DNA of 64,000 nt from the IMG/VR virus record IMGVR_UViG_3300009184_000029, positions 62,001 to 126,000 of that record, one strand, 5' to 3'. This document shows, piece by piece, positions 24,823 through 46,035 of this stretch. The notes under the pieces were generated by a model. The model was not told the DNA's origin and did no database searches. It saw nothing but the letters and a program-made list of their open reading frames with translations. Made by a program: the position numbers and the translations under genes. How positions within the stretch are numbered: position 1 is the stretch's first letter; each line of letters opens with the position of its first letter.

Positions 24823-25554
24823 TTATTCATCAACTACATTTGACAAACCAATATATAATTTTTTATATTTTTTAATTGATTGTCTAATTTCCTTAGTTGA
24901 AAGGTTAGTCATTTCCCTCAGAGATAAAAGAATAAGATTTTTATTAAACTTATTGTTTGATGACGATAAAAATATTGATTCATAATTTGAAAATATTTCA
25001 TGTAATGCCAATCCTAGTTTATATTCATTATCTGAAAGAGACGGTTCATCTAACACTATTCTAATCTCAACAATTAAATCATTTATTACTGATTTTTCAC
25101 CCCCTTCTTCAAATTGCATGTCGTATGACATTTTTGGATTGTTTTCCAAGTCTGAAGAAATATCTTCGTATGAAATTTTTCTGTTTGTTTCTTTTTGGTC
25201 TTTTAGTATTTGACCCATTAAATAATTTTTACAAATTGTCCCAAAATAGGAATAAGCCTTTTTTTCTTTTGACGGACTAAACTTGTCAATTTTTGTCATT
25301 AAAAAGGAATGGGTATCGGTATGTAAATCCAAAAAGTCCATGTCTTTTCTGTACAATTTATATCTCCTTATGATAGATGAAATCATCTTGTCTAAAGGAC
25401 TTCTGAGAAATTGATTGTATATTTTATTTTTCTCATTGAAAGTATCAGCGGTGAGAAACATCCTCACCGCTAACTCTTCTCGTTCCGCAAAATAATTTTC
25501 ATTCTTTTTTGGACGTTTTGTATCATCGAGAACAATTATTGTATCCCCAGTCAT
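24823..25554 (-). CDS. phage late-transcription sigma factor (gp55-like, sigma70 region 2)
   Basis: KMISSIIRRY...D......FLM.KIDKFSPSKEKKAYSYFGTICKNYL resembles region-2 FDPxKxxxxxYFxxI. Confidence 0.72.
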   Translation of the reverse strand: MTGDTIIVLDDTKRPKKNENYFAEREELAVRMFLTADTFNEKNKIYNQFLRSPLDKMISSIIRRYKLYRKDMDFLDLHTDTHSFLMTKIDKFSPSKEKKAYSYFGTICKNYLMGQILKDQKETNRKISYEDISSDLENNPKMSYDMQFEEGGEKSVINDLIVEIRIVLDEPSLSDNEYKLGLALHEIFSNYESIFLSSSNNKFNKNLILLSLREMTNLSTKEIRQSIKKYKKLYIGLSNVVDE

Positions 25555-26354
25555 TAAACACTTGGTTCATAATTTATTTCTCTATCTGATGTGAAAAAAT
25601 ATTCTTTTTTCGCAGATTCAACCCAAAATTTAACTTCTTTTTCATCTAATTTAGACTCACTATTTTTGTAATCCCAAAATAAAGATTGTTCTCTTAAATT
25701 AGTATGTTTATAACCAATCTTAGGAATTGTCATAATTTTAACTGAATTATAAGTCATTCTTAAAAGAAACTCATAAACAAATGTCAATTTTAAATTACTT
25801 TTAAATCCTCCAAATTCCTTAACAGTACTTTTTTTGATTACCATTCCTGAAGTTTGAAAATTTTGATACCCGTGTAATGTTTCATTAGTTAAGATACCAA
25901 CTTCTTGACTAAAATTAGCAGCAAATGTTGCTTCATTTGTGAATCCCGCAAAAACTGATTTATTATCCACATCAATTACTACTGGTAAAAACGCATCTAC
26001 ATCGGGATGATGTGTGGTATATTTTTGAACATTATTAAACCAAATTGATGAATACTCATCATCAAATTCAAAGAAACTTAACCATTCAGATGATGAATTT
26101 TCAATACCCATATTGATTTGAGATGAATAATTTGGTTCATCTTTAAATTCAACCATTTTAACATTTAAATCACCAAAATCAAAATTATTTAAATATTCTG
26201 TTAATTTTTCTTCATTTGATTTTACAATTACTAACTCATTGAATGGAGTTTTTTGAGTTTTTAAACTCTCAATACATTTTTTAAAATATTCATCAAAATC
26301 TCTAACTAGTGCCGATTTGATTGGTAATATTACTGATAAATTTAATTTTTCCAT
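25554..26354 (-). CDS. glycosyltransferase family 2
   Basis: SVILP start, NELVIV, FFEFDDEY (DxD-like). Confidence 0.8.
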   Translation of the reverse strand: MEKLNLSVILPIKSALVRDFDEYFKKCIESLKTQKTPFNELVIVKSNEEKLTEYLNNFDFGDLNVKMVEFKDEPNYSSQINMGIENSSSEWLSFFEFDDEYSSIWFNNVQKYTTHHPDVDAFLPVVIDVDNKSVFAGFTNEATFAANFSQEVGILTNETLHGYQNFQTSGMVIKKSTVKEFGGFKSNLKLTFVYEFLLRMTYNSVKIMTIPKIGYKHTNLREQSLFWDYKNSESKLDEKEVKFWVESAKKEYFFTSDREINYEPSV

Positions 26355-26358
26355 TTTC

Positions 26359-27414
26359 TTATACTGTTTGAAGTTTATTTAGTTGTGACTCAATCATTTC
26401 AATTCTAATGTCGAAATAATTTTGGAAATTTTCAATTACTGAATTTTCAAATTTTTCTTTACTTGAGAATAACGATGATGTTTCTTCCATTGATTCATAG
26501 AGTTTTTCAGAAATATTATCTTCCAACCAATTTTGAATGAAGTCAGCAATAAAATCAACAATTTTATTTTGTTCTTGAATCCAAATACCATTATGTTCAT
26601 TCATCCAAGACGGAGCCATGTTTGGAATTTTACCAATAACTGGTACACCACACTTCATTGATTCCAATGGGAATGTTCCAAATGAACTAATTGGGTCAAT
26701 CCACACACTCAAAAAACATTCTTGGAATGTTTCAGCAAATTGTTCTTCAGTCAAACCTCTCATATCTCTAAATGCGAACCATCTAAACTGAGGGTATTTT
26801 AAGTAAAAAGACTTAATTACATTCATTGAATCTCTTTGTTCTCTTGAATGAATTGCGATAATTGGTTTTGGTGGAATTGATTGTTTAACAAATCTTTCTG
26901 AGATGTAAGGTTCAATTACATCAGTCGGGGTATTTTTCATCATCCCTGAAACATAATTTTTTAATGATTCTGAGGTTGTAATACATTTATTAACATTCAA
27001 CTGAGACCAATTTGTACCAGGTTGTAATGTATCTAAAATGTAATCATAACATTGTGCCAATGAAATCTTGATACAAGGTAGATTAGAAATTTGTTGCATT
27101 ACGTACCCAAATAGTTCAGGAACAACAATCATATCTTCAGGTGACACCATCAATTGATTACCCTCAACAGATGAATGAGATAGTTCGTCCATATATTCGG
27201 AACCTAAACATTCTTTGACTCCAACATAGTCTGATTTTTCATGTAAAATCATTGAGTTAAATCCTGCTCTTTTTAAAGTTAGAGCCATTTGATAAATGAA
27301 TCTAACACTACCTGTTAAATTACCTTTTGTATCTTGTACAAAAAAATAAATTTTGGCAGATTTGTTTTTTAGATTTTCGATGGATACTTCTAATTTTTTA
27401 ATATTCTCGTCCAT
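26359..27414 (-). CDS. GT-B glycosyltransferase (GT4-like)
   Basis: SFGTFPLESMKCGVPVIG donor-binding motif. Confidence 0.75.
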   Translation of the reverse strand: MDENIKKLEVSIENLKNKSAKIYFFVQDTKGNLTGSVRFIYQMALTLKRAGFNSMILHEKSDYVGVKECLGSEYMDELSHSSVEGNQLMVSPEDMIVVPELFGYVMQQISNLPCIKISLAQCYDYILDTLQPGTNWSQLNVNKCITTSESLKNYVSGMMKNTPTDVIEPYISERFVKQSIPPKPIIAIHSREQRDSMNVIKSFYLKYPQFRWFAFRDMRGLTEEQFAETFQECFLSVWIDPISSFGTFPLESMKCGVPVIGKIPNMAPSWMNEHNGIWIQEQNKIVDFIADFIQNWLEDNISEKLYESMEETSSLFSSKEKFENSVIENFQNYFDIRIEMIESQLNKLQTV

Positions 27415-27415
27415 T

Positions 27416-27679
27416 TTAAATTTGTTTAATTATTTTATTATAAAGTAATGTATTAAATGCAATCTTAAAGGGAATACTAACATCACTTTTATCCCCTAAA
27501 GTTTCGTCAACTTCATCCTTTTCGGTTAAAATTGTCTCAATCATAATTTTTATTAACTCATAAGTGACCACACTTATTTGTTGCTCAGTTACACCAGATA
27601 CCGACTCAATCAAAACACTTTTACTGTTTATTTCTTCTAAGTCAATATAGTATAAATTATTGAATACTTTTAACATCAT
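27416..27679 (-). CDS. hypothetical protein
   Basis: 87-aa ORF. Confidence 0.7.
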   Translation of the reverse strand: MMLKVFNNLYYIDLEEINSKSVLIESVSGVTEQQISVVTYELIKIMIETILTEKDEVDETLGDKSDVSIPFKIAFNTLLYNKIIKQI

Positions 27680-28319
27680 CCTTTTTAATTTTATCTATTA
27701 TACTTTGCAGTTCTTTTAATTTTGTAATGGAATACTTTGACTCAGAATCTTCATTATATTGAGTGTTATATTTTATACAAGGTTTTTTACTTTTTTTAAT
27801 TAGTTCAGGATTTGAAGTCACTAATACATCAAAATTCCCCCAAATACTATCTTCTGTAATCTTACTATAAAAAATATATTTCTCAACTAAACATCCAAAC
27901 TTTGATAAGAAAAAAAGAGTTGCGGGTTTAGATTTACCGATTTCATCTGAAATTATTACTATTTCGTTATCGTCTCGGTTATTTAAATAAAATTCGTTTA
28001 AATCGTTAAACGTTGACATTTCAGTTGATGAGGCATGTCCAAATATCCCCATAGCAAAATCCTCATACATAAATGAGTACAATTCTTCTTCATTTCTAAA
28101 TTTAAAGTGATTTAATAAATTTAAACTTGTAACAGGTGATAAAACCTCATAATTAAATTTATCCTCAACAACTGATTCCAAATTGTTTTCATCGGTAATG
28201 TCAATTTTAACCAAAGTTTCTTCAGTTTCATTTTCATCAATCATATGTTTCTCATATAATTGAGTGAATTTTGCAATAGTATCCCTTAAAACTCCGTTAA
28301 CCTCAATCCCTATCTTCAT
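27657..28319 (-). CDS. HAD-fold 5'(3')-nucleotidase-like protein with altered motif I
   Basis: MKIGIEVNGVLRD (cf. MxIGIDxDGVL), later K and cap-like region. Confidence 0.6.
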   Translation of the reverse strand: MKIGIEVNGVLRDTIAKFTQLYEKHMIDENETEETLVKIDITDENNLESVVEDKFNYEVLSPVTSLNLLNHFKFRNEEELYSFMYEDFAMGIFGHASSTEMSTFNDLNEFYLNNRDDNEIVIISDEIGKSKPATLFFLSKFGCLVEKYIFYSKITEDSIWGNFDVLVTSNPELIKKSKKPCIKYNTQYNEDSESKYSITKLKELQSIIDKIKKDDVKSIQ

Positions 28320-29034
28320 ATCTTTTTAATAATTCAGTAATAATCGGATTTCTAACAACATCTCCATCTCCAAATTCATGGACACCAACTTCAGACATGT
28401 TTCTTAATCTTTCTAAAACGTCCCATAATCCTGAGTGTTTTTTATCTTTATATCTGTCAGTTTGTTCTAAGTCACCGGAAATAAAGAATTTACTATCAGT
28501 CCCAATACGAGTTAAAAGAAGTTTCATTTGTTTTGGTGTGGCATTTTGTGCTTCTTCAAAAATTAATATTGAGTTGTCAATATTCATACCTCTCATATAT
28601 GCCAAGGCAAAAACCTCAATAACCTCTAACTGTTTTAATTTTTCTCTAGCCTCCTTACCTATAATTTTGTTTAATAAATAATAAGATGGAAAAATATAAG
28701 GGTCCAATTTCTCTTCCACATTACCTGGTAATGAACCTAATTTCTCTTCAGCCTCGACCGCAGGTCGAACAATAATTATTTTCTCATATGGGGAATCATG
28801 TTCGGCCAATAAGTCAACTGCTGCCTTCATTGCAATAAAACTTTTACCAACACCCGCAGGTCCTGAACAAACAGTAATTTGGTTTCGTCTAAGTTTATCG
28901 TAATACTCCCTTTGACTTTGGGTTAAGAATTTATCCTTACCCTTTTTTATAATTCTACAAATTTGGTCTTTTTTTGAGACCTTAGTTTCTGACCCAAAAT
29001 CAATTGGGTCTTTAGTTGTTTTCTTTCTTGTCAT
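28303..29034 (-). CDS. phoH: PhoH-family ATPase
   Basis: GPAGVGKS, IIIVRPAVE, LGSLPG, LAYMRG, EEAQN, GDLEQTD, VVRNP. Confidence 0.95.
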   Translation of the reverse strand: MTRKKTTKDPIDFGSETKVSKKDQICRIIKKGKDKFLTQSQREYYDKLRRNQITVCSGPAGVGKSFIAMKAAVDLLAEHDSPYEKIIIVRPAVEAEEKLGSLPGNVEEKLDPYIFPSYYLLNKIIGKEAREKLKQLEVIEVFALAYMRGMNIDNSILIFEEAQNATPKQMKLLLTRIGTDSKFFISGDLEQTDRYKDKKHSGLWDVLERLRNMSEVGVHEFGDGDVVRNPIITELLKRYEDRD

Positions 29035-30008
29035 TATTTAATTGTATAATAATCCATCCAGTAGTCAATCATTTCATCTAACATTGACTCAAATGTATAG
29101 TCATGTAACCAACCTGTTTTAATTTTTAATTTTGAACAGTCTCCTTTTAAATCGTGTAATTCTTCAGGTCTTAAAAATTTTTCATCTTGTTTAACATATT
29201 CAGACCAATTTAGACTTAATCTTGTAAAAACATAATTGACAAGTTCTTTCACTGAATGAGATATTCCTGTTGAACAAACAAAATCATCGGGTTCATCTAA
29301 TTGTAATATTTCCCACATTGCCTTAACATAATCTTTAGCGTGTCCCCAGTCACGAGTAGCGTCAAGATTACCCAATTTAAGTTCATTGGATAGTCCTAAT
29401 TTAATCTTAACCGCTTCTTTACATACTTTATTAGTTACAAAGTTTGTTCCCCTTCTTGGGGATTCATGATTAAATAAAATCCCATTTGAAATAAACATTC
29501 CGTAAGAATTTCTATAATTACGACAAATGTTATAACTGAATACCTTAGCACACCCGTATGGGGACACAGGATTCATTGGAGTAGTTTCTCTTTGATATCC
29601 ATCTGAGTCAATTGAATTACCAAACATTTCTGAAGAAGATGCTTGATATATTTTTGTGTCAGGCTTAATTAATTTAACCGCCTCTAAAAGATTTAAAGTT
29701 CCTAATCCTGTTACATTTGTTGTGTAAATTGGTTGGTCAAATGAAATTCTAACATGTGATTGAGCAGCTAAATTATATATCTCATCTGGCATTATTTTCT
29801 GAACTACTGATATTAGTGAAGACATGTCAGTTAAGTCCGCATAGTGAAGTTTTATCTTAGTATAAACATTATCCAATCTTGATGTTTGGTTTTCGGCAAC
29901 TGAATTTCTTTTTAAAGTTCCGTGAACTTCATACCCTTTTTCTAATAAAAATTCACTCAAATATGACCCATCTTGGCCATTTATTCCTGTTATTAATGCT
30001 TTTTTCAT
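29034..30008 (-). CDS. gmd: GDP-mannose 4,6-dehydratase
   Basis: ALITGINGQDGSYL, YNLAAQSHV..SF, YQASSSEMFG, SPYGCAK, GILFNHESPRRG.NFVT, RDWGHAKDYV. Confidence 0.96.
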   Translation of the reverse strand: MKKALITGINGQDGSYLSEFLLEKGYEVHGTLKRNSVAENQTSRLDNVYTKIKLHYADLTDMSSLISVVQKIMPDEIYNLAAQSHVRISFDQPIYTTNVTGLGTLNLLEAVKLIKPDTKIYQASSSEMFGNSIDSDGYQRETTPMNPVSPYGCAKVFSYNICRNYRNSYGMFISNGILFNHESPRRGTNFVTNKVCKEAVKIKLGLSNELKLGNLDATRDWGHAKDYVKAMWEILQLDEPDDFVCSTGISHSVKELVNYVFTRLSLNWSEYVKQDEKFLRPEELHDLKGDCSKLKIKTGWLHDYTFESMLDEMIDYWMDYYTIK

Positions 30009-30874
30009 TGTTTAATATAATCTCTATAGTTTTCAATATTATTTAAAAGATACGATGGGTAAGTGTCGTCAATTGACACCTTTAAAAGTTTACCTCGAAA
30101 AAACGGGTCATTTTCCTCAACAATATTATTTTCAACACTTGATAATATATAAGGATTATTAAATTCTTGATGGGAATATGCATCAATTTTTGTTTTAACT
30201 CTTTCAGGACCTCCCATAAAACTAAAATGCCAACCACCACTCTCAACAATATTAGTCGTGTGTTTATTTTGTCTAATTAGATTAATCGATTTATTTTTTA
30301 AATTGCCGTAAGACAAACATTTAGTACCACTCCAATTATATTCTTTTAATAAATTAAAGTAATAATAATATGTGGTTTGTTTAAAATCGAAAATTGAATT
30401 TAAAATTGAATTTTTTAGTTTTAAAATTTCGTCAGGATTTGGTATTTCATCTAAATCTGATATTAATACTATATCGTCATCAGAACATCCAATCATACCA
30501 TAAAACATGGATTCTCTTTGGTAAGTTTCTCTACCCCATTGTTTTTCATGCCTTCCCCATCCTTCAGATGATTCTACATATTTTAAAATTCTGTTTTTAA
30601 CATTATCCACATCACTTAATGGATTTGATACATATGGTAAATTAATAAAATCATCAGGAGTGTCATTAACAATCACATGAATTATTTTATCTTCAAATTT
30701 TTTAAATTTGTCTTTATTTTCATTAAAAAATAATGGTTTTTCCTTACCTGAAAAAGTTACCGTAGATTCAACTATTACAAATTTATCAACAATATCATTA
30801 AGTATTTCTAATCTTAATTCCAATATATCTAATTCGTTAAAAAATAAAAAACAGTCGTATATTTTATTCATCAT
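30005..30874 (-). CDS. glycosyltransferase family 17-like (MGAT3-type)
   Basis: IYDCFLFFNELDILELRL, ISDLDEIP, GWHFSF. Confidence 0.88.
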   Translation of the reverse strand: MMNKIYDCFLFFNELDILELRLEILNDIVDKFVIVESTVTFSGKEKPLFFNENKDKFKKFEDKIIHVIVNDTPDDFINLPYVSNPLSDVDNVKNRILKYVESSEGWGRHEKQWGRETYQRESMFYGMIGCSDDDIVLISDLDEIPNPDEILKLKNSILNSIFDFKQTTYYYYFNLLKEYNWSGTKCLSYGNLKNKSINLIRQNKHTTNIVESGGWHFSFMGGPERVKTKIDAYSHQEFNNPYILSSVENNIVEENDPFFRGKLLKVSIDDTYPSYLLNNIENYRDYIKQ

Positions 30875-31782
30875 ATTAAATTTTTAGATTTATAATATTC
30901 TAATGCTTGGTTTTTACAGGTTTGATAATCAAACAATTGACCATCCCTATCCATATATGTAAATCCTCGAGTATACACATCACCAGTTGCCCAATAACCA
31001 TCACTAACATTATGTCTTGACCAATATTTTGGAGCAATCACTTTGTTTACATTTTGATTTAACCAAGCCGGCCACCAACCAAATGTTGAGTTAGAAATTA
31101 TTAACCATTTTGCTTTATAGATTAAATAAAAATCAAATCCTATTTCATCATGTATTGTAGGAATATCAAATGGCATATACATTCTTGCACAATTTGGGTC
31201 ATCAGTTACCACTAAAAATTTCATATTGGGGTTAATTGAGACCATATGGTTTATTGAGTCCCTCCAATATTCTCTTCTTAATATAACATTTGGTATATTT
31301 TGATATTCACCACCTCTAAAATTTAAAATACATAAATTATCATCAAGAACAATTGATAAATCATTTAATTTTTTTTCGTATTTATTTATATATTCTCGTT
31401 TAATTTTAAACCAATTCAGTATATCAGGTTTTTTTTCAATTAAGTAATCTTCACATTGATAAATTCCGCCTAATGCCCCATTATCTCCAATTAATTTAGT
31501 ATTATCACTAATCCCATAAACTCTTGGGTCAAACATTGTTATGTTTACATTATCATAGTGATGATATGTAATCCATCTTTCATGAAATTCGGTAAAGTCT
31601 CCAGTGACTTCTTTACCGAAATCAACATCCATAAAATACATTTGATTCATCCCGCCATAATAATCGTGACTTGGGGTTGGATTAATTCCCCACTCAAATC
31701 CTAATTTTTCGGCAACCGCTCTACAAACAGAATATTGCCACATATGGTTTCCAAAATTACCAGTTAAATTTGTAGTTATCAT
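30871..31782 (-). CDS. glycosyltransferase family 11 (alpha-1,2-fucosyltransferase-like)
   Basis: GNFGNHMWQY, NFRGGEY, IISNSTFGWWPAWL. Confidence 0.88.
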   Translation of the reverse strand: MITTNLTGNFGNHMWQYSVCRAVAEKLGFEWGINPTPSHDYYGGMNQMYFMDVDFGKEVTGDFTEFHERWITYHHYDNVNITMFDPRVYGISDNTKLIGDNGALGGIYQCEDYLIEKKPDILNWFKIKREYINKYEKKLNDLSIVLDDNLCILNFRGGEYQNIPNVILRREYWRDSINHMVSINPNMKFLVVTDDPNCARMYMPFDIPTIHDEIGFDFYLIYKAKWLIISNSTFGWWPAWLNQNVNKVIAPKYWSRHNVSDGYWATGDVYTRGFTYMDRDGQLFDYQTCKNQALEYYKSKNLI

Positions 31783-31783
31783 T

Positions 31784-32491: not shown

Positions 32492-32492
32492 G

Positions 32493-39525: not shown

Positions 39526-39548
39526 ATTAAAATATATGTAATTCGTAG

Positions 39549-40313
39549 TTAATTATCAATAGAGACCCATTCATTTGGAATTATGTCTTGAGTATCTTTT
39601 GGTCCGGTTGGTCCAAACCATTTTTTTGGTGTAATTATTTTACCATTATTATCATTAAGATATGACCCCCACCAACTGAATGAACTATTAGATATTATAA
39701 CATTTTTACACATAGTAATTAATGTAAAATCTAAAATTTCATCATCAAAATCTGAGTATAAAAAATTATCAGATTTAAAGTTTAATTTAACCCAATCCAT
39801 ATCATCTGACACAAATATAAATTTTGTGTCATTGATTAACTCAATTGCCTTTTGGTAATAATTTAAATCACAGGTAAAATGAAAATCTTTAAATTTTAAA
39901 TAATCACCTCTTCTTATATGAACACAAGTTAAATTTTTAATATCATATTTACTTGATATTACTTTAATATTTTTATCACTAATAAAAAATAATTTTTTAA
40001 TATCATTTATATTATTTTTAAAATATTTTTCACTTTGGAAATACCCATTTAACAATAAATTTTTTTCATAAGGTATATTAGAAAACGAAAACTTTGGTTC
40101 ATTATATTTTTTTTCAAATTCATAGTTATTGTGATTTGGAATATTTTTAAAAATATTATCTATATATTTGATAGATTGATTACCTTGATTTGGTGTGTAA
40201 CATTGATGAAAATTAAATGAATAGGTATCATCATTAGACAATGCTAATGACACTGTTGCTGCAATTTGGAACATTTGATTACCAAGACCTCCCTGTAAAT
40301 TACAACTTATCAT
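39549..40313 (-). CDS. glycosyltransferase family 11
   Basis: GGLGNQMFQ, GYFQSEKYF, VHIRRGDY, ISNSSFSWWG. Confidence 0.95.
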   Translation of the reverse strand: MISCNLQGGLGNQMFQIAATVSLALSNDDTYSFNFHQCYTPNQGNQSIKYIDNIFKNIPNHNNYEFEKKYNEPKFSFSNIPYEKNLLLNGYFQSEKYFKNNINDIKKLFFISDKNIKVISSKYDIKNLTCVHIRRGDYLKFKDFHFTCDLNYYQKAIELINDTKFIFVSDDMDWVKLNFKSDNFLYSDFDDEILDFTLITMCKNVIISNSSFSWWGSYLNDNNGKIITPKKWFGPTGPKDTQDIIPNEWVSIDN

Positions 40314-41016
40314 ATGGTTTTTTATTTCTTATTTTGGTGGCGTGGTCATTGACCATATCCATATTTACTTTATGCTCGTTGATAGGATTATTTTCGTTAT
40401 ATATATAATTTATTTCACTCATAAAACGATAATGTTCCTCACCTGACATTTCTAACATCGGAAACATAAAACACAGGTCCCCACTCCATTGCCAGTAATT
40501 ACCATTTTCATCTCTTAAATCTTCTTCTTTGATTTTTCTCCACAAAAAGGTTCTCCAAGTTCGAATATGAGATGCGGTAAATCTACTTTTTCGTAAATTT
40601 GAAAAATTTGTTTGAGGTTGTGAAAATCCTGGTGTTCCATTTGAGTATTTAAAACTTCCATTTGCAATCCAAATGTTTTCATCTTCATATAATTTATTAA
40701 TTCTTGTTAACACATTTGAGTCGGATAACCAATCATCCCCATCAACTTCAACAATTACTTCATTGTCTGATATATTTTCATTATATCTAATTATTTTATC
40801 AAAATTACCCGCTTGATATAATTTTTTATCATTATCGTCGACTAAAATAAATCTATTATCATCTTTAATTAAATCTTTAACTATCGATACTGATTTATCA
40901 GTTGATAAATCATGAGTAATGTAACATTTAAAATCTTTAAACCTTTGTCCCATAATAGACAATATTGATTTTTCAATGTAATTTTCCGCATTATAAAAAC
41001 CTGTTAAAACTACCAT
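40300..41016 (-). CDS. glycosyltransferase family 2
   Basis: EVDGDDWL, HIRTWR, DLCFMFPMLEM. Confidence 0.85.
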   Translation of the reverse strand: MVVLTGFYNAENYIEKSILSIMGQRFKDFKCYITHDLSTDKSVSIVKDLIKDDNRFILVDDNDKKLYQAGNFDKIIRYNENISDNEVIVEVDGDDWLSDSNVLTRINKLYEDENIWIANGSFKYSNGTPGFSQPQTNFSNLRKSRFTASHIRTWRTFLWRKIKEEDLRDENGNYWQWSGDLCFMFPMLEMSGEEHYRFMSEINYIYNENNPINEHKVNMDMVNDHATKIRNKKPYDKL

Positions 41017-41017
41017 A

Positions 41018-41698
41018 TTATTTAATATATTTTTTTAAAATTTTATCATTATACCCCTCTCTGTTGATTTGTAAAAAATCTATACTTTGATTAATTAAAA
41101 TATCATTTTCTGTATCCCAATTTAAATTTAATAAATGTGTTTCTTCTTTTATTTTCGGATTTTTATGTAGTAAACCATATATTTTATTTGATAACTCCAT
41201 GACACTTATTTTCTCAACTCCTGATAAAAATAATAAACTATTATTTGTTTTATCAATACAATATAGAACAATATTTACCAAATCTTCAATATCAATCAGA
41301 GAACGATAAACATTTTTATAAATTAATATTTCATTTTCATTTTTAACAGATTCTTTTAAAAAATTAACAATATTATTTTTATTTCCGTTAAATCCAACTA
41401 TTTGAGGAATTCTAAATATTATATAATTTTTACAATTGTTTTTGATAATTTCCTCGACTTGTAATTTATGTCTATAGTAATCATTATCAATTATTCCTGT
41501 TAATACGCTGCTAAAATAAATTAATTTTAAATTTTGATTGTTATTAATTAAATTAATTAATAATTTTTTTTCTCGTTCAAAATTATTGATGTTTGTTTCT
41601 TTAGAGTTAGATACACCTGAAGCAAAAATTAAAAAATTCTCTAATGACTCGGAAAATTTTTTAAACTCTGAGGATAATAAACCTGAGCCAACAATCAT
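41018..41698 (-). CDS. short NAD-dependent epimerase/dehydratase-like protein
   Basis: MIVGSGLLS, IFASGVSNS, YFSS, YYRHK (YxxxK). Confidence 0.78.
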   Translation of the reverse strand: MIVGSGLLSSEFKKFSESLENFLIFASGVSNSKETNINNFEREKKLLINLINNNQNLKLIYFSSVLTGIIDNDYYRHKLQVEEIIKNNCKNYIIFRIPQIVGFNGNKNNIVNFLKESVKNENEILIYKNVYRSLIDIEDLVNIVLYCIDKTNNSLLFLSGVEKISVMELSNKIYGLLHKNPKIKEETHLLNLNWDTENDILINQSIDFLQINREGYNDKILKKYIK

Positions 41699-43557
41699 AA
41701 TTCAAATAATTTAATCCATTTATCAATTACTTCTTGATTAGTTAGTATACTAACCTCAGTTTTTGTTGATTCGGTTCCTAAAAATTCTGTATTAGTTAAA
41801 TAACATTCATCTTTAACCAAACACGCCACTTCACTTATTGATGAGTGGTAAACTTTACCAATCATATTATACATTTCTTGTTTATTTGTATGTGTTCCAT
41901 AAAAAATTACACGAATACCGTCAATTAAAGGTTTTACGTAATTTTCATAATATATTTGGTCCGTAACATTACCAAATACATATATTTTTTCACAATTATC
42001 ATTTAATGCTCGTTTAATTGATACGTGAGTTTGTTTATTTTCATCAATACTGCCAATAATACCCACAGTATTTGAAAGATGAGATTTATTAATAGAAATT
42101 AAGTTTTCTTTTAAATTTGGAATTATGTTAAAGTCTCCATTGTATTGCTTATGATAATTTCTCTGTTCATCATTTATAAACACTACTGTGTCCCAAAATT
42201 GTTTTTTTTCTCCAACTTTATATAGATTTTTTTCATGACAAGATAATATTACTTTTTTTGCAGGAGGTCTTGATGGTAAATCTAAAAAATGACAAATTAA
42301 AATATCAGATTCGGTAACCGATAAATATTGAATTAATGATGATTTACATTTATCTAAATGCCAATTATGTGGTCCATAAAATGTACAATCAATACCATTT
42401 TTATTTAGAGTATTTGTTAAGTTAATAAATGCTGTTGTTGAGCCACCTTTTTCTGAAAAACCTGAAACAATTTTGACTTTAAGACCATCATAGGGTTTAA
42501 ATTCATTTAATAATGATATTAAATCTTCTTTTTGGATAGAATCATTAATTGTTATAATTTTTTTAACATTACGATAATCTGAAATTATATTAAGATTATT
42601 GTCTGTTGTATTATTATAAATTTGTAAAACATTTGGATATAATAATTCACACATCCTAACTTCATCTAAGTTAGATGGAATAATAACATCAATCTTATGT
42701 TCGGATGTTTTATAATACTGACCAATTTGTGATGTTTGAGGTCCATTTTGAGTGTTAATCATAAATGTACCGTCTCCTATTTTAAACCCAATAGGGTTAG
42801 TAATACTAAAATTAGTTAATTTCTCACTTTTAAATTTTGAAGACACATTTGACAAACTAGAAATTATAACATTTAATTCTTCATTTGGTAAGTACCCAAT
42901 TTTAGATGGTAAATTATTTGAGTATTTTTCACTAAAAAGTTTTCTGTTTTTTTCCCATTGCTCGTTTGTCATCCCGATAGATTTATGGGTGACTCTAATA
43001 TTTGTTATAACCCCAATTTTAACCCCATCTAAAAAATTTCTATAGCAAAAATTAACATCGTACATGTGAAACCCTGGAACTGAATCATCGTATCCTTTGC
43101 TTATTTTAGTTTTATTAATTGCGGTAAATAAACCGTCAACTAAAATTACTTCTTTTATGTTATTTTGTAATGAGTCAGAATATCTTGATTCCCATTTTTT
43201 ACCTTCATGTTCATGGTTTACAATACCCCACATTTTTGACCTATCTTCCCACCACATACCACTTTTTGGTAAAAGTGTAGAACCCGCAACTCCTAAAATT
43301 GCAAAATCAGAATTTCTATCAAATAACTTTTTCAATTTTTGGCCCCAATTATTGGTATCAAAATAGATGTCATCATGACATAAAACAACTATATCATATT
43401 CTGACTCTGATATAATTTCATTATAAACTTGAGATAAATTTTTTTCTCCGTTATTAATCTTTTCAATAATTTGAACTTTAGGATTACCTACTGACTTTTT
43501 AAGATATTCTTGAAAATTTTTATTACAACTTTTTGTACTATATCCTATCGTTATCAT
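41695..43557 (-). CDS. two-domain glycosyltransferase (GT-A N-terminus plus GT-B-like C-terminus)
   Basis: YN..I.ES.YDIVVLCHDDI, GFHMYDVNFC; C-terminal GGSTTAF and VGIIGSIDENKQ. Confidence 0.75.
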   Translation of the reverse strand: MITIGYSTKSCNKNFQEYLKKSVGNPKVQIIEKINNGEKNLSQVYNEIISESEYDIVVLCHDDIYFDTNNWGQKLKKLFDRNSDFAILGVAGSTLLPKSGMWWEDRSKMWGIVNHEHEGKKWESRYSDSLQNNIKEVILVDGLFTAINKTKISKGYDDSVPGFHMYDVNFCYRNFLDGVKIGVITNIRVTHKSIGMTNEQWEKNRKLFSEKYSNNLPSKIGYLPNEELNVIISSLSNVSSKFKSEKLTNFSITNPIGFKIGDGTFMINTQNGPQTSQIGQYYKTSEHKIDVIIPSNLDEVRMCELLYPNVLQIYNNTTDNNLNIISDYRNVKKIITINDSIQKEDLISLLNEFKPYDGLKVKIVSGFSEKGGSTTAFINLTNTLNKNGIDCTFYGPHNWHLDKCKSSLIQYLSVTESDILICHFLDLPSRPPAKKVILSCHEKNLYKVGEKKQFWDTVVFINDEQRNYHKQYNGDFNIIPNLKENLISINKSHLSNTVGIIGSIDENKQTHVSIKRALNDNCEKIYVFGNVTDQIYYENYVKPLIDGIRVIFYGTHTNKQEMYNMIGKVYHSSISEVACLVKDECYLTNTEFLGTESTKTEVSILTNQEVIDKWIKLFEL

Positions 43558-44129
43558 ATTCCTGTACTCCCAAAACCATTTTCGTTTCTATCTTTATTAT
43601 TGATTTTATCTATTTTAACAAGATTCACCCATTTACCTCCAGTGCATCTTGATACAACCCCCTGAGCAATTTTCATTCCTTTAGTGATTGTAAATGGGGT
43701 TGAATTAACGTTAAAAATTATAACTTTAACTTCTCCTGTATATCCTTGGTCAACTGTTCCTGGACTATTTAAAACCATTAACCCTTGGTTAATTGCTAAA
43801 CCGCTTTTTGACCTTACTTGGATTTCAAAATCTTCAGGAATATCAAATTTAATCCCTGTTGGAATTAGGGCTCTACCTAAAGGTGGTAATGTAATTTCTT
43901 CAGATGAATATAAATCAAACCCACTATCACTTAGATAATTGTACTTTAATTCATAATCTTCATCTGAAGTATATTTTACTAAAACTTTACCTGAATTTTC
44001 ATCTATGTCATCCTCAAGTCCTTGGATGTCAATACCAAATGAATCTTTTAATTTATTAATCAATAAGTCATACTGATTATTTTCAATTAATGATTCTAAT
44101 TCGTTCATTTCATCACTAAAATCGTTCAT
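43554..44129 (-). CDS. dut: trimeric dUTPase
   Basis: SGFDL, QVRSKSGL, GTVDQGYTGEV, KIAQG, RNENGFGSTG. Confidence 0.96.
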   Translation of the reverse strand: MNDFSDEMNELESLIENNQYDLLINKLKDSFGIDIQGLEDDIDENSGKVLVKYTSDEDYELKYNYLSDSGFDLYSSEEITLPPLGRALIPTGIKFDIPEDFEIQVRSKSGLAINQGLMVLNSPGTVDQGYTGEVKVIIFNVNSTPFTITKGMKIAQGVVSRCTGGKWVNLVKIDKINNKDRNENGFGSTGI

Positions 44130-44824
44130 AAAGATGTTATTTTTTTGACTACATTTATTAATACTTCTACATCTTTCTCACAATATTCTTTAATCTCATC
44201 ATACTTATTTTCATTCCAAAACGAGTTATGAACTTTACTACCTGTGATTTCCATATTTTTAGAACTCTCAATACCTAAAGAAATACACATTAATTCTAAA
44301 GAACTGATTGCCCCAAATTGACCGTATTGCCATATTTCTTTTGTATCAATCGCCTTAATCTCCCAAGGTTTAGTATCATATGATGGTAAAATACCTGATG
44401 GTAAAACTCCATTAATCATCATTCGTTTCGCCAATACAGGTATGTCAAAATTCTTTAAATTATGACCACATAAAACAAAACCTAATTTATCGACTCTATT
44501 CAGTAATTGGTTAACTTCTGTTAATAGAACTTTTTCATCTGAATTAAAAAAAGTTTGTTTTTTAACTTCACCCTTAGGGTCTAAAAATCCAACAGATACA
44601 CAAATTATTTTACAAAATTCAGGTATTAAAGCGGCTCTTAATTCAAATATTTCTTCAATCGATTTTCCTGAATCTTCAGTAAATCTTTTTAAAAACCAAT
44701 CTTGATAATTAGTGAACTGAAATAACAACTCGGGATAGTCTTTTTTGAAGTTTTCAAAATTACTTGATACTCCTACTGTCTCAATGTCAATAAATAAAAT
44801 TTTGTTTATTGGATGTTTTATCAT
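44126..44824 (-). CDS. DEDD 3'-5' exonuclease (PolB-exo-like)
   Basis: FIDIET, GHNLKNFDIP, YCEKDV. Confidence 0.9.
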   Translation of the reverse strand: MIKHPINKILFIDIETVGVSSNFENFKKDYPELLFQFTNYQDWFLKRFTEDSGKSIEEIFELRAALIPEFCKIICVSVGFLDPKGEVKKQTFFNSDEKVLLTEVNQLLNRVDKLGFVLCGHNLKNFDIPVLAKRMMINGVLPSGILPSYDTKPWEIKAIDTKEIWQYGQFGAISSLELMCISLGIESSKNMEITGSKVHNSFWNENKYDEIKEYCEKDVEVLINVVKKITSL

Positions 44825-46035
44825 ACTATGGATTTATAAAATTCTTGTCTTGCTTTTGTAACTATATTTAAATCATATTTTGCGGAAACTGTTTCATATA
44901 ATCTTTCACCCATATCCTTAACTAAATTAGGATTTTGTTGTAATTTCTTAATATGTTTCGCCCAATCACTGTGGTTTCTTGAGTCCCCAACAAGTAATGC
45001 GTTCCCGTCTACAAAGTTACCATTTTTTAAACAATGTTTCAAGTCTATTGTATAAGGACCAAAATCACTTGCGATTAATGCTTTTTTATAAAATCCTGAT
45101 TCTATCACCTTTAATTGTGATTTAACTTTGTTAAACATATGTTGTTTAACAGGTGCTAACGAAACATCAAATTTTGAATAATTTTTAGCATAGGATGTTA
45201 CAGGTTTTGTCCAAACTCTCAAATAAGGTTGCTCGGATTCGTTCTCATACATCGTATCTTTAAATCTTTCAAGATGTAATTTATATTCAGGTGTAACAAT
45301 AGAATAATTGTCAGTAAAAATCTTTTCATACAGGTACCAAACAGTTTCGTTAGGTTTGATTGGTCTTTGTTTTTTCTCACCTGTTTGTTGATTTATTTCA
45401 GTCATTACTCCTCTTGTGTCAAACCCACATAATACAAATTGTAAGTTGTCTTTAATATCTTTTAACTTACTAACCATACCATCTAACAACATTAAATCGT
45501 GTAAATGTGATGAACCACCTAACCACCCAACTCTTAATTTATCTGATTCGGGAGTTACTTCTTTAAATTGTGCCTCATTAGGGTCAATCGCATTAGGGAA
45601 TATAAAAACATTTGGATTGAATTTTTTAATCTCGTCCGCAAAAATAGTAGTTGTTGTAGTTACATATTTTGATAATTTTAAATTTGCTACAATCTTTTCA
45701 TGAATTTTGTCCTGTTTAATTAAATCATGAAGAGGATGTTCTTTAGTAGGTAACCAATAATCATCAATATCACATACAGTGATAATACCTAGTTTATTTA
45801 AAACAGGGATAAATTCTATTGACGCATCCAAATTAGGGGAAACTGAACGATGGTAATGTACAATATGGTATTGTTTCCAAAATGAAATGTCATTCAAATC
45901 GGGTTCAAATACAATATCTACGTGAAAATCTTCAGAATAATTATTTTGTAAGAATATGTGGGGGTCAATTGACCTGAATTTTCCAACACCTGTACGGTCT
46001 GATGGTACTACTAGTAATTTAATTTTTTCTTTCAT
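44821..46035 (-). CDS. GT-B glycosyltransferase (GT4-like)
   Basis: DIDDYW, VGWLGGSSH..DL, DVSLAPV, KSQLKVIESG....IASDFGPY. Confidence 0.85.
   Translation of the reverse strand: MKEKIKLLVVPSDRTGVGKFRSIDPHIFLQNNYSEDFHVDIVFEPDLNDISFWKQYHIVHYHRSVSPNLDASIEFIPVLNKLGIITVCDIDDYWLPTKEHPLHDLIKQDKIHEKIVANLKLSKYVTTTTTIFADEIKKFNPNVFIFPNAIDPNEAQFKEVTPESDKLRVGWLGGSSHLHDLMLLDGMVSKLKDIKDNLQFVLCGFDTRGVMTEINQQTGEKKQRPIKPNETVWYLYEKIFTDNYSIVTPEYKLHLERFKDTMYENESEQPYLRVWTKPVTSYAKNYSKFDVSLAPVKQHMFNKVKSQLKVIESGFYKKALIASDFGPYTIDLKHCLKNGNFVDGNALLVGDSRNHSDWAKHIKKLQQNPNLVKDMGERLYETVSAKYDLNIVTKARQEFYKSIV

What the first reader, a model, noticed from the sequence alone, without database searches (positions are those of the whole stretch)
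25554..46035. Roughly 20-kb phage glycan-biosynthesis supercluster
Seen: about 24 contiguous co-oriented genes, including three GT2, two GT4-like, a two-domain GT, GT17-like, three GT11-like, GT92-like, GT9-like, DUF5672- and DUF3431-like proteins, two methyltransferases and four sugar-nucleotide enzymes. No flippase, Wzy polymerase, ABC exporter or initiating phosphoglycosyl transferase was recognised, and these proteins look soluble. Known: bacterial O-antigen loci need export and polymerisation genes. Inference: the products are cytoplasmic glycans built on proteins, DNA or particles, as in giant-virus glycosylation, probably methylated and complex.
Basis: partly seen in the sequence, partly recalled or inferred. 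Interest (0 to 1): 0.75.

Follow-up and report, generated by a model that had tools for sequence, protein, structure and literature searches.

The report
Jumbo phage fibre-glycosylation gene supercluster
A freshwater jumbo phage, probably of Flavobacteriales, carries about twenty soluble sugar-adding enzymes in two swappable clusters around its tail-fibre genes, one of them resembling the enzymes that start protein O-glycosylation, so the phage most likely coats its own fibres with variable, methylated deoxy-sugar glycans.

Summary
Window 25554-46035 is a gap-free, co-oriented operon with at least 14 glycosyltransferase (GT) domains, 2 methyltransferases and 4 sugar-nucleotide enzymes. The contig is a phage of a very abundant freshwater jumbo lineage that fits the published 'moraphages'; it is not a chimera.

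No cluster protein has a transmembrane segment. Neither this 223-kb record nor a complete 321-kb relative encodes a flippase, polymerase, ABC exporter or initiating phosphoglycosyl transferase.

- **Frame and cassette.** Conserved genes bracket a 12.7-kb hypervariable cassette (29034-41698). In 70 relatives it holds 260 protein families, none membrane-bound, and its content does not track backbone relatedness.
- **Second block.** A glycan block at 55099-62655 lies outside the finding, directly after the fibre genes. Its first gene is as conserved as the capsid protein. It is a GT60-type enzyme whose closest structural matches are Dictyostelium Skp1 GlcNAc-transferase and mucin-type polypeptide GalNAc-transferases.

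Best reading (about 0.55): cytoplasmic O-glycosylation of the phage's S/T-rich fibres. Host-envelope remodelling through host carriers remains a real rival. This is a new variant of a known kind.

The parts
24823..25554 (-). Conserved sigma-like gene at the downstream end of the operon (possible late sigma factor)
   Evidence: Only weak hits: Sigma70_r2, TIGR02937 and phrog_234 'late sigma' at 8.5e-4. 67-68% identical in relatives.
25554..27414 (-). Left conserved frame: GT2 (266 aa) and GT4-like GT-B (351 aa)
   Evidence: Pfam GT2 4e-9. ESM Atlas places the 351-aa protein in the GT-B fold, in virus-only clusters. 55-68% identical in G001-G003.
27416..29034 (-). Conserved non-glycan genes inside the cluster: 87-aa ORF, HAD/NT5C-like 220-aa ORF, PhoH
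   Evidence: PhoH 2.9e-62. The HAD-like call is by eye from the translation. All three are conserved in relatives.
29034..41698 (-). Hypervariable cassette of 16 genes: GMD, GT17, GT11, DUF3431, GT11-like, methyltransferase, unknown, GT92, DUF5672, MTase-like, GT2, short SDR, E1-type 3-dehydrase, GT11, GT2, short SDR
   Evidence: Pfam and NCBIfam and PDB 3bcx at 1.9e-79 with the His-for-Lys change. Absent or different in relatives. GC is 26.6% against 30.7% for the genome.
41695..43557 (-). Bifunctional 620-aa GT: N-terminal GT-A (Glyco_tranf_2_5) plus C-terminal GT4-type GT-B. Begins the right conserved frame.
   Evidence: Pfam 7.5e-24. AF2 model pLDDT 89.9. Foldseek matches majastridin for the N-terminus and BshA, PimA and WbnH for the C-terminus.
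43554..44824 (-). Dut (dUTPase) and PolB-exonuclease-like gene, conserved, not glycan-related
   Evidence: NF001862 scores 133.6 against a cut-off of 103. DNA_pol_B_exo2 5.5e-12.
44821..46035 (-). Conserved GT4-like GT (404 aa), right edge of the finding
   Evidence: phrog_7162 4e-42. ESM Atlas: RfaG-like, virus-only clusters. 63-69% identical in relatives.
46084..48641 (-). Five conserved small genes at the head of the same operon (one with a WYL domain); unknown function
   Evidence: The only upstream TATTTAT motif of the 24-kb unit sits before 48641.
48692..55045 (+). Two fibre-like genes (735 aa and 1376 aa), transcribed divergently from cluster 1; candidate acceptors
   Evidence: Weak Laminin_G_3 hit. 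The 1376-aa protein is 22% S+T and has Cys-knot and YadA-like repeats. It has no homologue in G001.
55099..56343 (+). Lineage-core GT60-type putative polypeptide HexNAc-transferase (proposed initiating enzyme)
   Evidence: PF11397 5.7e-70 and phrog_24687 3e-168. AF2 pLDDT 95.8. Top Swiss-Prot match is Gnt1 (Q8T1C6) at 1.5e-26, followed by 29 ppGalNAc-transferases. PDB top 40 are ppGalNAc-transferases. Invariant D92-x-H94 and H229. 74% identical in G001, rank 18 of 145.
56348..62655 (+). Second glycan block: 239-aa unknown, GT10, Glyco_transf_7C-like, 291-aa unknown, HtrL_YibB-like (559 aa), 122-aa and 333-aa unknowns
   Evidence: Pfam. The GT60-like and HtrL pair is conserved with variable genes between them.

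Best explanation
This is a phage-encoded, wholly cytoplasmic protein-glycosylation system aimed at the phage's own S/T-rich fibre proteins.

Proposed steps:
1. A lineage-core GT60-type enzyme (55099-56343), encoded directly after the fibre genes, transfers a first HexNAc onto Ser/Thr of fibre proteins. This step is inferred from family and fold.
2. The conserved frame GTs (25554, 26359, 41695, 44821 and the HtrL-like 59577) build a common inner glycan. This is inferred.
3. The cassette GTs (GT11 x2-3, GT17, GT92, GT2 x2, DUF3431 and DUF5672 in cluster 1; GT10 and GT7C-like in cluster 2) add a strain-specific outer part.
4. The sugar supply starts from host GDP-mannose. GMD makes GDP-4-keto-6-deoxymannose. 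The E1-type PMP 3-dehydrase and the two short reductases would then yield 6-deoxy and/or 3,6-dideoxy hexoses, which are substrates for the fucosyltransferase-like GT11 and GT10 enzymes. Enzyme identities are shown; substrates and products are inferred.
5. SAM methyltransferases cap or decorate the glycan.

The cassettes are exchanged between phages by recombination within the conserved frame genes. This produces O-antigen-like diversity of the virion surface.
For: **No route out of the cytoplasm.**
- 0 TM segments in the cluster ORFs.
- No ORF with more than 3 TM segments in the complete 321-kb relative.
- 0 of 726 island ORFs in 70 relatives have 2 or more TM segments.
- No Bac_transf, ABC_tran or Wzx.

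**The GT60-like gene points to a polypeptide acceptor.**
- PF11397 at 5.7e-70.
- Model pLDDT 95.8.
- Best Swiss-Prot fold match is Skp1-hydroxyproline GlcNAc-transferase, E 1.5e-26, TM 0.65. The next 29 matches are all polypeptide GalNAc-transferases, and so are the top 40 PDB chains.
- AFDB clusters name GT60 proteins and procollagen-lysine dioxygenase fusions.
- Invariant DxH plus His.

**The GT60-like gene is core to the lineage.**
- It is 74% identical between G000 and G001, against 73% for the capsid protein and 71% for the large terminase.
- 7103 homologues were found.

**Position next to the fibres.**
- It directly follows the fibre genes here, in L279 (after SprB, Laminin_G_3 and PA14 fibre-like genes) and in G001. 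In G001 both clusters bracket 34 kb of ORFs with 18-30% S+T.
- Cluster 1 and the fibre genes share a 50-bp divergent control region with back-to-back copies of the genome's enriched start motif.

**Conserved frame with a swappable cassette.**
- Four or more GTs are conserved at 55-74% while the cassette turns over.
- Conserved soluble GTs argue for a conserved, phage-supplied acceptor.
- The published moraphage study also lists four GT orthogroups among core genes (PMC12619734).

**Precedent.** Virion O-glycosylation by phage GTs is demonstrated in mycobacteriophages (Freeman 2023, as cited in PMC12363180 and PMC12619734).
Against: - No experimental or proteomic evidence exists that any virion protein is glycosylated.
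- GT family and fold do not prove the acceptor, and no member of this phage clade has been assayed.
- S/T-rich composition is common in phage fibres anyway.
- The cassette gene set (GT2, GT4, GT11, GMD, E1-type dehydrase) is exactly what bacterial O-antigen loci contain. 3,6-Dideoxyhexoses are known mainly from LPS.
- Similar islands in pelagimyophages and cyanophages have been read as host O-chain modification (PMC7029224, PMC12801897).
- The complex prediction of the GT60-like enzyme with the fibre N-terminus gave no answer.
- No RNA run was listed, so expression timing is unknown.
- The window's own record is only about 76% complete.
Confidence: 0.55

Rival explanations
1. The clusters remodel the host envelope. 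The soluble phage GTs and sugar-nucleotide enzymes would act on host undecaprenyl-linked O-antigen, capsule or O-glycan precursors at the inner face of the membrane. Host flippases or ABC transporters would export the altered glycan. The changed surface would block superinfection, or stop progeny being lost on cell debris.
For: - The gene families are those of O-antigen and capsule loci: GT2, GT4, GT10, GT11, GMD, an RfbH/E1-type dehydrase, FkbM methyltransferases, hexapeptide acyltransferases.
- Low GC and cassette-like hypervariability mirror bacterial O-antigen loci.
- HtrL_YibB is an LPS-core-region family.
- This is the published reading for analogous islands in pelagimyophages and cyanophages (PMC7029224, PMC12801897).
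- The predicted hosts, Flavobacteriales, have rich surface glycans (PMC12619734).
Against: - Not one of 726 island ORFs, nor any ORF of a complete 321-kb genome, is an integral membrane protein, initiating transferase, flippase, polymerase or ligase.
- Host Wzx and Wzy enzymes are usually specific for their own repeat unit (own knowledge), so about 15 added transferases would be hard to accommodate.
- Four to five GTs are lineage-core although host surfaces differ.
- The core GT60-like enzyme belongs to a family whose characterised members glycosylate polypeptides (own knowledge of CAZy GT60 and GT27).
- The clusters sit in the fibre module rather than among early genes.
Confidence: 0.27
2. 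The GTs hypermodify phage DNA with glycans to evade restriction.
For: - Dut and an exonuclease lie inside the cluster.
- The 44821-type GT has homologues in Phapecoctavirus as four tandem GTs next to primase, DNA methylase and DNA polymerase.
- DNA glycan hypermodification by viral GTs is known (Pyle 2024, as cited in PMC12619734).
Against: - The only thymidylate-synthase-family protein is a canonical ThyA that passes its equivalog cut-off, and Dut is canonical. No dCMP or dUMP hydroxymethylase is evident.
- About 20 GTs, with fucosyltransferase-type families, deoxy-sugar synthesis and O-methyltransferases, far exceed any known DNA glycan.
- The cassette varies between near-identical backbones.
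Confidence: 0.05
3. The cluster has mixed or other targets. One part, the GT60-like block, would glycosylate phage or host proteins. Cluster 1 would make a free or lipid-linked cytoplasmic glycan, or a glycosylated small molecule, or would modify host cytoplasmic proteins for takeover.
For: - The two clusters are separate transcription units with separate conserved frames.
- Nothing links cluster 1's GTs directly to a protein acceptor.
- GT-B relatives include BshA- and MshA-type small-molecule GTs.
Against: - The two clusters share fucosyltransferase-type chemistry (GT10, GT11) and a common position around the fibres.
- One G001 island gene is homologous to a cluster-2 gene, which suggests a single gene pool.
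Confidence: 0.13

Closest known systems
Mycobacteriophage virion O-glycosylation (Che8, Corndog, Myrna; Freeman et al. 2023, cited in PMC12363180 and PMC12619734)
   Same: Phage-encoded soluble GTs, located near structural genes, glycosylate virion proteins in the host cytoplasm. The GT sets vary between phages.
   Different: Those systems have 2-4 GTs, other GT families, an actinobacterial host, and capsid or tail-tube C-termini as acceptors. Here there are about 20 GT domains, dedicated deoxy-sugar synthesis, methyltransferases, a GT60-type initiator and fibres as the presumed acceptor. Nothing here has been shown experimentally.
Giant-virus autonomous glycosylation (chlorovirus PBCV-1 capsid glycans; Megavirinae fibril glycan clusters)
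   Same: Cytoplasmic, virus-encoded GTs together with GMD-type sugar-nucleotide enzymes and sugar methyltransferases. Multi-domain GTs. Clade-specific gene clusters. GT11-like and GT60-like relatives occur in Nucleocytoviricota.
   Different: This is a bacterial virus with a tailed-phage backbone. There is no evidence of shared descent of whole clusters, and the acceptors and linkages are unknown. The comparison rests partly on my own knowledge of that literature.
Hypervariable 'host recognition cluster' of pelagimyophages and LPS-gene clusters of large cyanomyophages (PMC7029224; PMC12801897; P-SSM2, S-SCSM1)
   Same: Large aquatic myophages carry a non-syntenic island in the structural region that mixes tail-fibre genes with many GTs and sugar-nucleotide enzymes.
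   Different: Those islands were interpreted as host O-chain modification. GT8 dominates in pelagimyophages, and 13 GTs was reported as a possible record for a marine phage. Here there are at least 19 GT domains, a defined 'conserved frame plus cassette' anatomy, lineage-wide absence of membrane proteins, and a polypeptide-type initiating GT.
'Moraphages' (PMC12619734), the probable lineage
   Same: Aquatic jumbo phages of about 300 kb. Predicted Flavobacteriia hosts. GlnII-type glutamine synthetase and DnaK in some members. Four GT orthogroups among the core genes.
   Different: That paper did not describe the clusters, the cassette turnover, the sugar pathway or the GT60-like enzyme. Membership is inferred from shared traits and not from a tree that includes their genomes.
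Bacterial O-antigen and capsule loci (Wzx/Wzy or ABC-dependent)
   Same: Content of GTs and sugar-nucleotide genes, low GC, conserved flanks with a hypervariable centre, and exchange by recombination.
   Different: The defining initiating phosphoglycosyl transferase, flippase or ABC transporter, polymerase and chain-length regulator are all missing, in every one of the 70 loci examined.
Dictyostelium Skp1 glycosylation pathway (Gnt1, GT60) and mucin-type O-glycosylation (GT27)
   Same: The GT-A fold with a DxH motif is the best structural match. Gnt1 is a cytoplasmic enzyme acting on a protein. In the Skp1 pathway a galactosyl- and a fucosyltransferase follow, which parallels the GT7C-like and GT10 genes here (own knowledge of that pathway).
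   Different: Only 26% identity. No prolyl hydroxylase is present, so a Hyp acceptor is unlikely. A different C-terminal beta domain replaces the ricin lectin domain. Donor and acceptor have not been tested.

Membership tests
Bacterial Wzx/Wzy- or ABC-dependent O-antigen or capsule locus | Initiating phosphoglycosyl transferase (WbaP/Bac_transf or WecA type) | tested here: not met
   No PF02397 hit in the record. No multi-TM protein in G000, the complete G001 or 726 island ORFs.
Bacterial Wzx/Wzy- or ABC-dependent O-antigen or capsule locus | Flippase with polymerase, or ABC transporter | tested here: not met
   No PF01943 hit. PF00005 gives only sub-threshold P-loop hits. The maximum is 3-4 TM segments in any ORF of either genome.
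Bacterial Wzx/Wzy- or ABC-dependent O-antigen or capsule locus | GTs plus dedicated sugar-nucleotide genes in one co-oriented, low-GC, hypervariable block | tested here: met
CAZy GT60 / Pfam PF11397 (polypeptide alpha-GlcNAc transferases) | Sequence membership above the curated threshold | tested here: met
   237 bits against a cut-off of 21, E 5.7e-70.
CAZy GT60 / Pfam PF11397 (polypeptide alpha-GlcNAc transferases) | GT-A fold with DxH metal motif, closest to Gnt1 and ppGalNAc-transferases | tested here: met
   Model pLDDT 95.8. Gnt1 at E 1.5e-26. Invariant D92, H94 and H229.
CAZy GT60 / Pfam PF11397 (polypeptide alpha-GlcNAc transferases) | Transfers HexNAc to a polypeptide Ser/Thr/Hyp | not testable with these tools
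   Needs an enzyme assay. The complex prediction gave no answer.
Phage virion glycosylation systems (mycobacteriophage type) | Phage-encoded soluble GTs adjacent to structural genes | tested here: met
Phage virion glycosylation systems (mycobacteriophage type) | Glycan demonstrably attached to virion proteins | not testable with these tools
   There is no isolate and no proteome; only metagenomic DNA.
Phage DNA glycosylation systems (T4-type and hypermodifying) | Hydroxymethyl-pyrimidine synthesis (dCMP or dUMP hydroxymethylase) to create the acceptor base | tested here: not met
   There is a single PF00303 protein. It passes the ThyA equivalog cut-offs (333 against 325; 328 against 108). Dut is canonical.
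E1/ColD-type PMP-dependent NDP-hexose 3-dehydrases | His replaces the Schiff-base Lys of DegT aminotransferases | tested here: met
   SFYPAHHIS aligns with E1 SFYPAHHIT. The H220K mutant entry 3bb8 shows AKH at that position.
E1/ColD-type PMP-dependent NDP-hexose 3-dehydrases | E1 subtype: Fe-S cysteines plus a partner E3 reductase | tested here: inconclusive
   The DCYC...TCK cysteines are kept, but no NAD_binding_1-type reductase exists in G000 or G001. A host reductase could serve.
'Moraphage' lineage (PMC12619734) | Aquatic jumbo phage of about 300 kb, Flavobacteriia-like DnaK and/or GS, core GTs, T4-like capsid protein and terminase but a distinct clade | tested here: inconclusive
   GS in G000. 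DnaK in G001 is 71-80% identical to Flavobacteriales. Core GTs are present. No phylogeny with the published genomes was possible.

The most novel reading that the evidence does not exclude
An abundant lineage of freshwater jumbo phages runs a mucin-type-like O-glycosylation pathway of its own in the bacterial cytoplasm. A GT60/GT27-like polypeptide HexNAc-transferase would initiate the glycan, and recombining GT cassettes would elaborate it. The result would be serotype-like glycan coats on tail fibres, a viral counterpart of bacterial O-antigen diversity that shares part of its gene pool with giant viruses.
Probability: 0.4. Interest if true: 0.85.

Novelty: new variant of a known kind. Interest (0 to 1): 0.68.

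Why it matters
If the fibres are glycosylated, tailed phages of Gram-negative hosts would have a complex, self-encoded protein glycosylation system. So far this is demonstrated only in a few mycobacteriophages and in giant viruses. Here it would be on a much larger scale, with about 20 GTs, its own deoxy-sugar synthesis and methylation.

The cassette turnover implies strong diversifying selection on the virion surface. Possible agents are host receptors or lectins, grazers, enzymes, or adhesion to particles. That would add a hidden layer to phage host-range and persistence in lakes.

It would also change how the common 'LPS genes' of large aquatic phages are read. They are usually assumed to alter the host. 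The conserved GT60-like enzyme offers a single, directly testable entry point.

The pan-island gene pool is also a large reservoir of soluble, uncharacterised GTs and sugar-modifying enzymes: 260 families in 70 loci.

Tried and rejected
- **Split RmlD gene.** The two RmlD-like ORFs looked like halves of one gene. Rejected: both are complete short SDRs with GxxGxxG and YxxxK.
- **DegT as aminotransferase (perosamine route).** Rejected in favour of a 3-dehydrase, because His replaces the catalytic Lys.
- **Chimera with bacterial DNA.** Rejected for three reasons. The flanks are phage core genes conserved in more than 70 IMG/VR contigs. The same arrangement was assembled independently in three samples. 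The DNA is held in at least 20 metagenome runs.
- **DNA glycosylation.** Disfavoured by the canonical ThyA and Dut.
- **Hydroxyproline-linked (Skp1-style) acceptor.** No P4H-type oxygenase was found.
- **Megablast against phage records.** No close relative.
- **The three large conserved ORFs at 19182-24433.** Pfam, PHROGs and PDB sequence searches gave nothing usable, so I could not show that the operon ends in structural genes.
- **Late-promoter test.** T4-type TATAAATA is not systematically upstream of structural genes. The enriched TATTTAT motif marks gene starts of all classes, so it cannot time the cluster.
- **Complex prediction of the GT60-like enzyme with the fibre N-terminus.** No answer.
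- **Metatranscriptome search.** No RNA run was listed.
- **Last unknowns.** PHROGs and Pfam at lax thresholds gave no hits for 34008-34763, 27416-27679 and several cluster-2 ORFs.

Full report
**1. What the window is**

The window is bases 62001-126000 of a single 222,829-bp IMG/VR virus record. The record has 30.7% GC, is linear, and CheckV estimates it at 76% complete.

- PHROGs identify a large terminase (6853-8601), a portal (8776-10605) and a gp23-like major head protein (14576-16378) upstream of the finding.
- No phage in GenBank is close at the DNA level.
- The capsid protein is 42-46% identical to those of an uncultured 484-kb phage, Microcystis phage Mel-JY01 and Flavobacterium phage immuto.
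- IMG/VR holds at least 449 contigs with a terminase 70-100% identical and at least 598 with a related PhoH. One of them is a complete 321,403-bp genome with terminal repeats, called G001 here.
- The DNA itself is held in at least 20 freshwater or estuarine metagenome runs. The fibre and cluster-2 arrangement was assembled independently in three samples. The contig is therefore not a chimera.

The traits fit the recently described 'moraphages' (PMC12619734). Those are aquatic jumbo phages of up to 307 kb, with predicted Flavobacteriia hosts, four core glycosyltransferase (GT) orthogroups, and glutamine synthetase or DnaK in some members.

- G000 has a GlnII-type glutamine synthetase.
- G001 has a DnaK that is 71-80% identical to DnaK of freshwater Flavobacteriales MAGs.
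- Membership is probable but not proven.

**2. Check of the observation**

Twenty-five minus-strand ORFs fill 25554-46035. The whole block 48641->24823 has 31 genes, with gaps of at most 48 bp and many 4-bp overlaps.

|---|---|---|
| Three GT2 | 25554-26354, 36836-37540, 40300-41016 | confirmed |
| Two GT4-like GT-B | 26359-27414, 44821-46035 | confirmed |
| Two-domain GT (620 aa) | 41695-43557 | confirmed: GT-A plus GT4-type GT-B |
| GT17 | 30005-30874 | confirmed |
| GT11 | 30871-31782, 39549-40313 | confirmed |
| Third GT11-like | 32493-33380 | lead only (Atlas features) |
| GT92 | 34760-35527 | confirmed |
| DUF5672, DUF3431 | 35531-36190, 31784-32542 | confirmed |
| Methyltransferases | 33383-34006, 36198-36830 | one clear, one weak |
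| Four sugar-nucleotide enzymes | 29034-30008, 37547-38233, 38221-39525, 41018-41698 | confirmed, one reassigned |
| GT9-like | not located | not confirmed |

Corrections and additions:

- The 'DegT' protein is not an aminotransferase. It aligns with CDP-4-keto-6-deoxyglucose 3-dehydrase E1 (PDB 3bcx, 1.9e-79). It carries His where aminotransferases have the Schiff-base Lys, and it keeps the E1 Fe-S cysteines. No E3-type reductase is encoded.
- The two RmlD-like ORFs are complete short SDRs, not halves of a split gene.
- Five genes inside the coordinates are not glycan genes: an 87-aa ORF, a HAD-like ORF, PhoH, a bona fide Dut and a PolB-exonuclease-like protein.

**3. Soluble, and no export machinery**

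- A Kyte-Doolittle scan finds no TM segment in any cluster ORF and no protein with more than 4 TM segments in the record.
- Because the record is incomplete, I repeated the scan on the complete relative G001. No ORF there has more than 3 TM segments.
- Profile searches find no Bac_transf, no Wzx and no ABC ATPase above threshold.

**4. Anatomy: a conserved frame around a swappable cassette**

I compared the window's proteins with three large relatives by tblastn. Two conserved stretches appear:

- A left frame at 24823-29034: the sigma-like gene, GT2, GT-B, two small ORFs and PhoH, at 47-76% identity.
- A right frame from 41695 to 48641: the GT-A domain of the 620-aa GT, Dut, the exonuclease, the 404-aa GT and five small genes.

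Between them, 29034-41698 (12.7 kb, 26.6% GC) is replaced by other genes in the relatives.

Anchoring on PhoH gave 80 more loci.

- Where both anchors fall within the stretch read, the interval from the start of the GT-A gene to PhoH runs from 1.5 kb to 10 kb (27 loci). In 36 loci the right anchor was not reached within the 10 kb read.
- The 709 ORFs upstream of PhoH in 70 loci fall into 260 families at 35% identity, 131 of them singletons.
- A Pfam tally of the 129 non-singleton representatives is dominated by glycan functions: GT2, GT10, GT11, GT2_5, RXYLT1_C, SDR epimerases and reductases, GMD, DegT, FdtA, hexapeptide acyltransferases, UDP-GlcNAc 2-epimerase, and FkbM and other methyltransferases.
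- None of the 726 ORFs (window included) has 2 or more TM segments.

Cassette content is uncoupled from the backbone.

- Loci whose PhoH is 96% identical share only GMD with the window.
- Loci at 86% share 13 of the 16 cassette genes at 71-93%.
- This indicates cassette exchange by recombination in the frame genes.

**5. A second glycan block and a protein-type initiating enzyme**

Cluster 1 is transcribed divergently from two fibre-like genes.

- The first is 48692-50899 (735 aa).
- The second is 50915-55045 (1376 aa). It is 22% S+T, has Cys-knot and YadA-like repeats, and has no homologue in G001.

Directly after them, outside the finding, lies a second block:

| Coordinates | Assignment |
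|---|---|
| 55099-56343 | PF11397 'Glycosyltransferase (GlcNAc)', E 5.7e-70; phrog_24687, 3e-168 |
| 57064-58008 | GT10 |
| 57995-58708 | Glyco_transf_7C-like |
| 59577-61256 | HtrL_YibB-like |
| four further ORFs | unknown |

Beyond the block come five ORFs with 20-29% S+T, against a genome mean of 14.7%.

PF11397 corresponds to CAZy GT60. Its characterised members are polypeptide GlcNAc-transferases; this is my own knowledge, and it agrees with the names returned.

- An AF2 model built on 41 homologues has pLDDT 95.8.
- Its best Swiss-Prot match is Dictyostelium Skp1-hydroxyproline GlcNAc-transferase Gnt1, at E 1.5e-26, 26% identity and TM 0.65.
- The next 29 matches are all polypeptide GalNAc-transferases, and so are the top 40 PDB chains.
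- D92-x-H94 and H229 are invariant, which is the metal-site pattern of these families.
- AFDB clusters add GT60 proteins and fusions to procollagen-lysine dioxygenase.
- BFVD adds 'GlcNAc' GTs of uncultured Caudovirales, Megaviridae and Pandoravirus.

The gene is as conserved as the capsid protein. It is 74% identical between G000 and G001, rank 18 of 145 shared proteins, against 73% for the capsid protein and 71% for the terminase. It has 7103 homologues at E <= 1e-5.

Its context is also conserved.

- In a relative at 79% identity it follows SprB, Laminin_G_3 and PA14/GLEYA fibre-like genes. After it come variable genes and then HtrL_YibB.
- A marine scaffold carries two copies, plus an FkbM methyltransferase, a sulfotransferase and HtrL_YibB.
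- In G001 the two GT clusters bracket 34 kb of ORFs with 18-30% S+T.
- No P4H-type prolyl hydroxylase is present, so Ser/Thr is a likelier acceptor than hydroxyproline.

**6. Sugar supply**

- GMD scores 397.6 bits on the TIGR01472 equivalog, just under its cut-off of 415. It would convert host GDP-mannose to GDP-4-keto-6-deoxymannose.
- The E1-type dehydrase and the two short reductases could then give 6-deoxy and 3,6-dideoxy hexoses.
- GT11 and GT10 families use GDP-fucose-type donors.
- Which nucleotide the dehydrase accepts cannot be told from sequence.
- An orphan, bona fide RmlA lies far away at G000:6434-7303.
- GMD is the most widely shared cassette gene, present in 38 of 70 loci. At 88.5% it is more conserved between G000 and G001 than the backbone.

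**7. Weighing the acceptors**

*Virion protein, my best explanation (0.55).* It rests on five points:

- The lineage-wide absence of any membrane step.
- The polypeptide-type, core, fibre-adjacent GT60-like enzyme.
- Conserved soluble frame GTs, which imply a conserved phage-supplied acceptor.
- The position of both clusters around the fibre array.
- The shared 50-bp divergent control region.

*Host-envelope remodelling through host lipid carriers and exporters (0.27).* This remains plausible. The gene families are those of O-antigen loci, and it is the published reading of similar islands (PMC7029224, PMC12801897).

*DNA glycosylation (0.05).* This is disfavoured. The only thymidylate-synthase-family protein is a canonical ThyA, and Dut is canonical.

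*Mixed or other targets (0.13).* This takes the remainder.

None of these readings is tested by experiment. The complex prediction gave no answer and no RNA run was listed.

**8. Comparison and novelty**

Several things are already known:

- Virion glycosylation by a few GTs in mycobacteriophages.
- Autonomous glycosylation in giant viruses.
- GT-rich hypervariable islands in pelagimyophages and cyanomyophages.
- Four core GT orthogroups in moraphages.

A 2025 cyanophage paper suggested that 13 GTs may be the highest number in a marine phage (PMC12801897). This incomplete genome has at least 19 GT domains: 14 in cluster 1, at least 4 in cluster 2, and one more at G000:22663-23400.

The new elements are these:

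- The explicit frame-and-cassette anatomy.
- Its extreme diversity across the lineage.
- The complete absence of membrane components in 70 loci and in a complete genome.
- The E1-type dideoxy-sugar step.
- A conserved GT60/GT27-like initiating enzyme next to the fibres.

I rate the finding a new variant of a known kind, with interest 0.68.

Noticed in passing
window 55099-62655 (+): A second glycan gene block lies outside the finding, directly after the fibre genes. It holds a GT60-like gene, GT10, a Glyco_transf_7C-like gene, an HtrL_YibB-like gene and four unknown ORFs.
   Followed up: yes
window 50915-55045 (+): A 1376-aa fibre-like protein with repeated Cys-knot modules (CPxGFxCxxGxC), YadA-like NVAIG repeats, 22% S+T and 35 N-x-S/T sequons. 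It has no homologue in the complete relative, so it is hypervariable in its own right.
   Followed up: partly
whole genome G000; in the window e.g. upstream of 6853, 13041, 16727, 48641(-), 48692, 50915, 61283: The heptamer TATTTAT is 14-fold enriched within 50 nt upstream of ORF starts (61 of 260 ORFs against 4.3 expected), mostly 4-18 nt before the ATG. Only one copy heads the 24-kb minus-strand unit. Two copies sit back-to-back in the 50-bp gap 48641-48692. It may be a phage promoter or start element.
   Followed up: partly
window 24823-25554 (-): A conserved 243-aa protein with weak sigma-70 region 2, ECF and 'late sigma factor' (phrog_234) hits, co-transcribed at the end of cluster 1.
   Followed up: partly
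window 14576-16378 (+): The 600-aa major head protein aligns to T4-like capsid proteins over only about 55% of its length, in two pieces. The middle of the protein is lineage-specific and may be an insertion or decoration domain.
   Followed up: no
window 19182-24433 (-): Three large conserved ORFs (498, 526 and 652 aa) have no family match. The first is 23% S+T with a weak WD40/beta-propeller hit. The last has three hydrophobic segments near its C-terminus.
   Followed up: partly
G000:12000-25500 (outside the window): Two families of multi-copy small ORFs, starting MNLQE(H/Q)I(R/S)R.. and MKYLITESQL.., are interleaved on opposite strands. They are reminiscent of the repeated antitoxin and homing-endonuclease modules reported for moraphages.
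   Followed up: no
G000:3864-8848 and 22663-24107 (outside the window): A canonical ThyA with an insertion of about 54 aa, an orphan bona fide RmlA, a GlnII-type glutamine synthetase, and a further GT2 next to an LpxH-like phosphoesterase.
   Followed up: partly
window 38221-39525 (-): The E1-type 3-dehydrase keeps the Fe-S cluster cysteines, yet no E3-type reductase exists in this genome or the complete relative. It would have to use a host reductase.
   Followed up: partly
L100 (Escherichia phage tuntematon 48463-51607) and L275 (Xanthomonas phage XacN1): Homologues of the 404-aa GT form four tandem GTs next to primase and DNA polymerase in Phapecoctavirus. The GT60-like gene of jumbo phage XacN1 sits with a carbamoyltransferase, a GT9 and a fibre-like ORF of about 3300 aa.
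   Followed up: no
window 12990-13040: A G10...C5 hairpin followed by a T-run precedes gene 13041, and similar GC-rich hairpins precede 6853 and 11454. These look like intrinsic terminators between the head-module genes.
   Followed up: no
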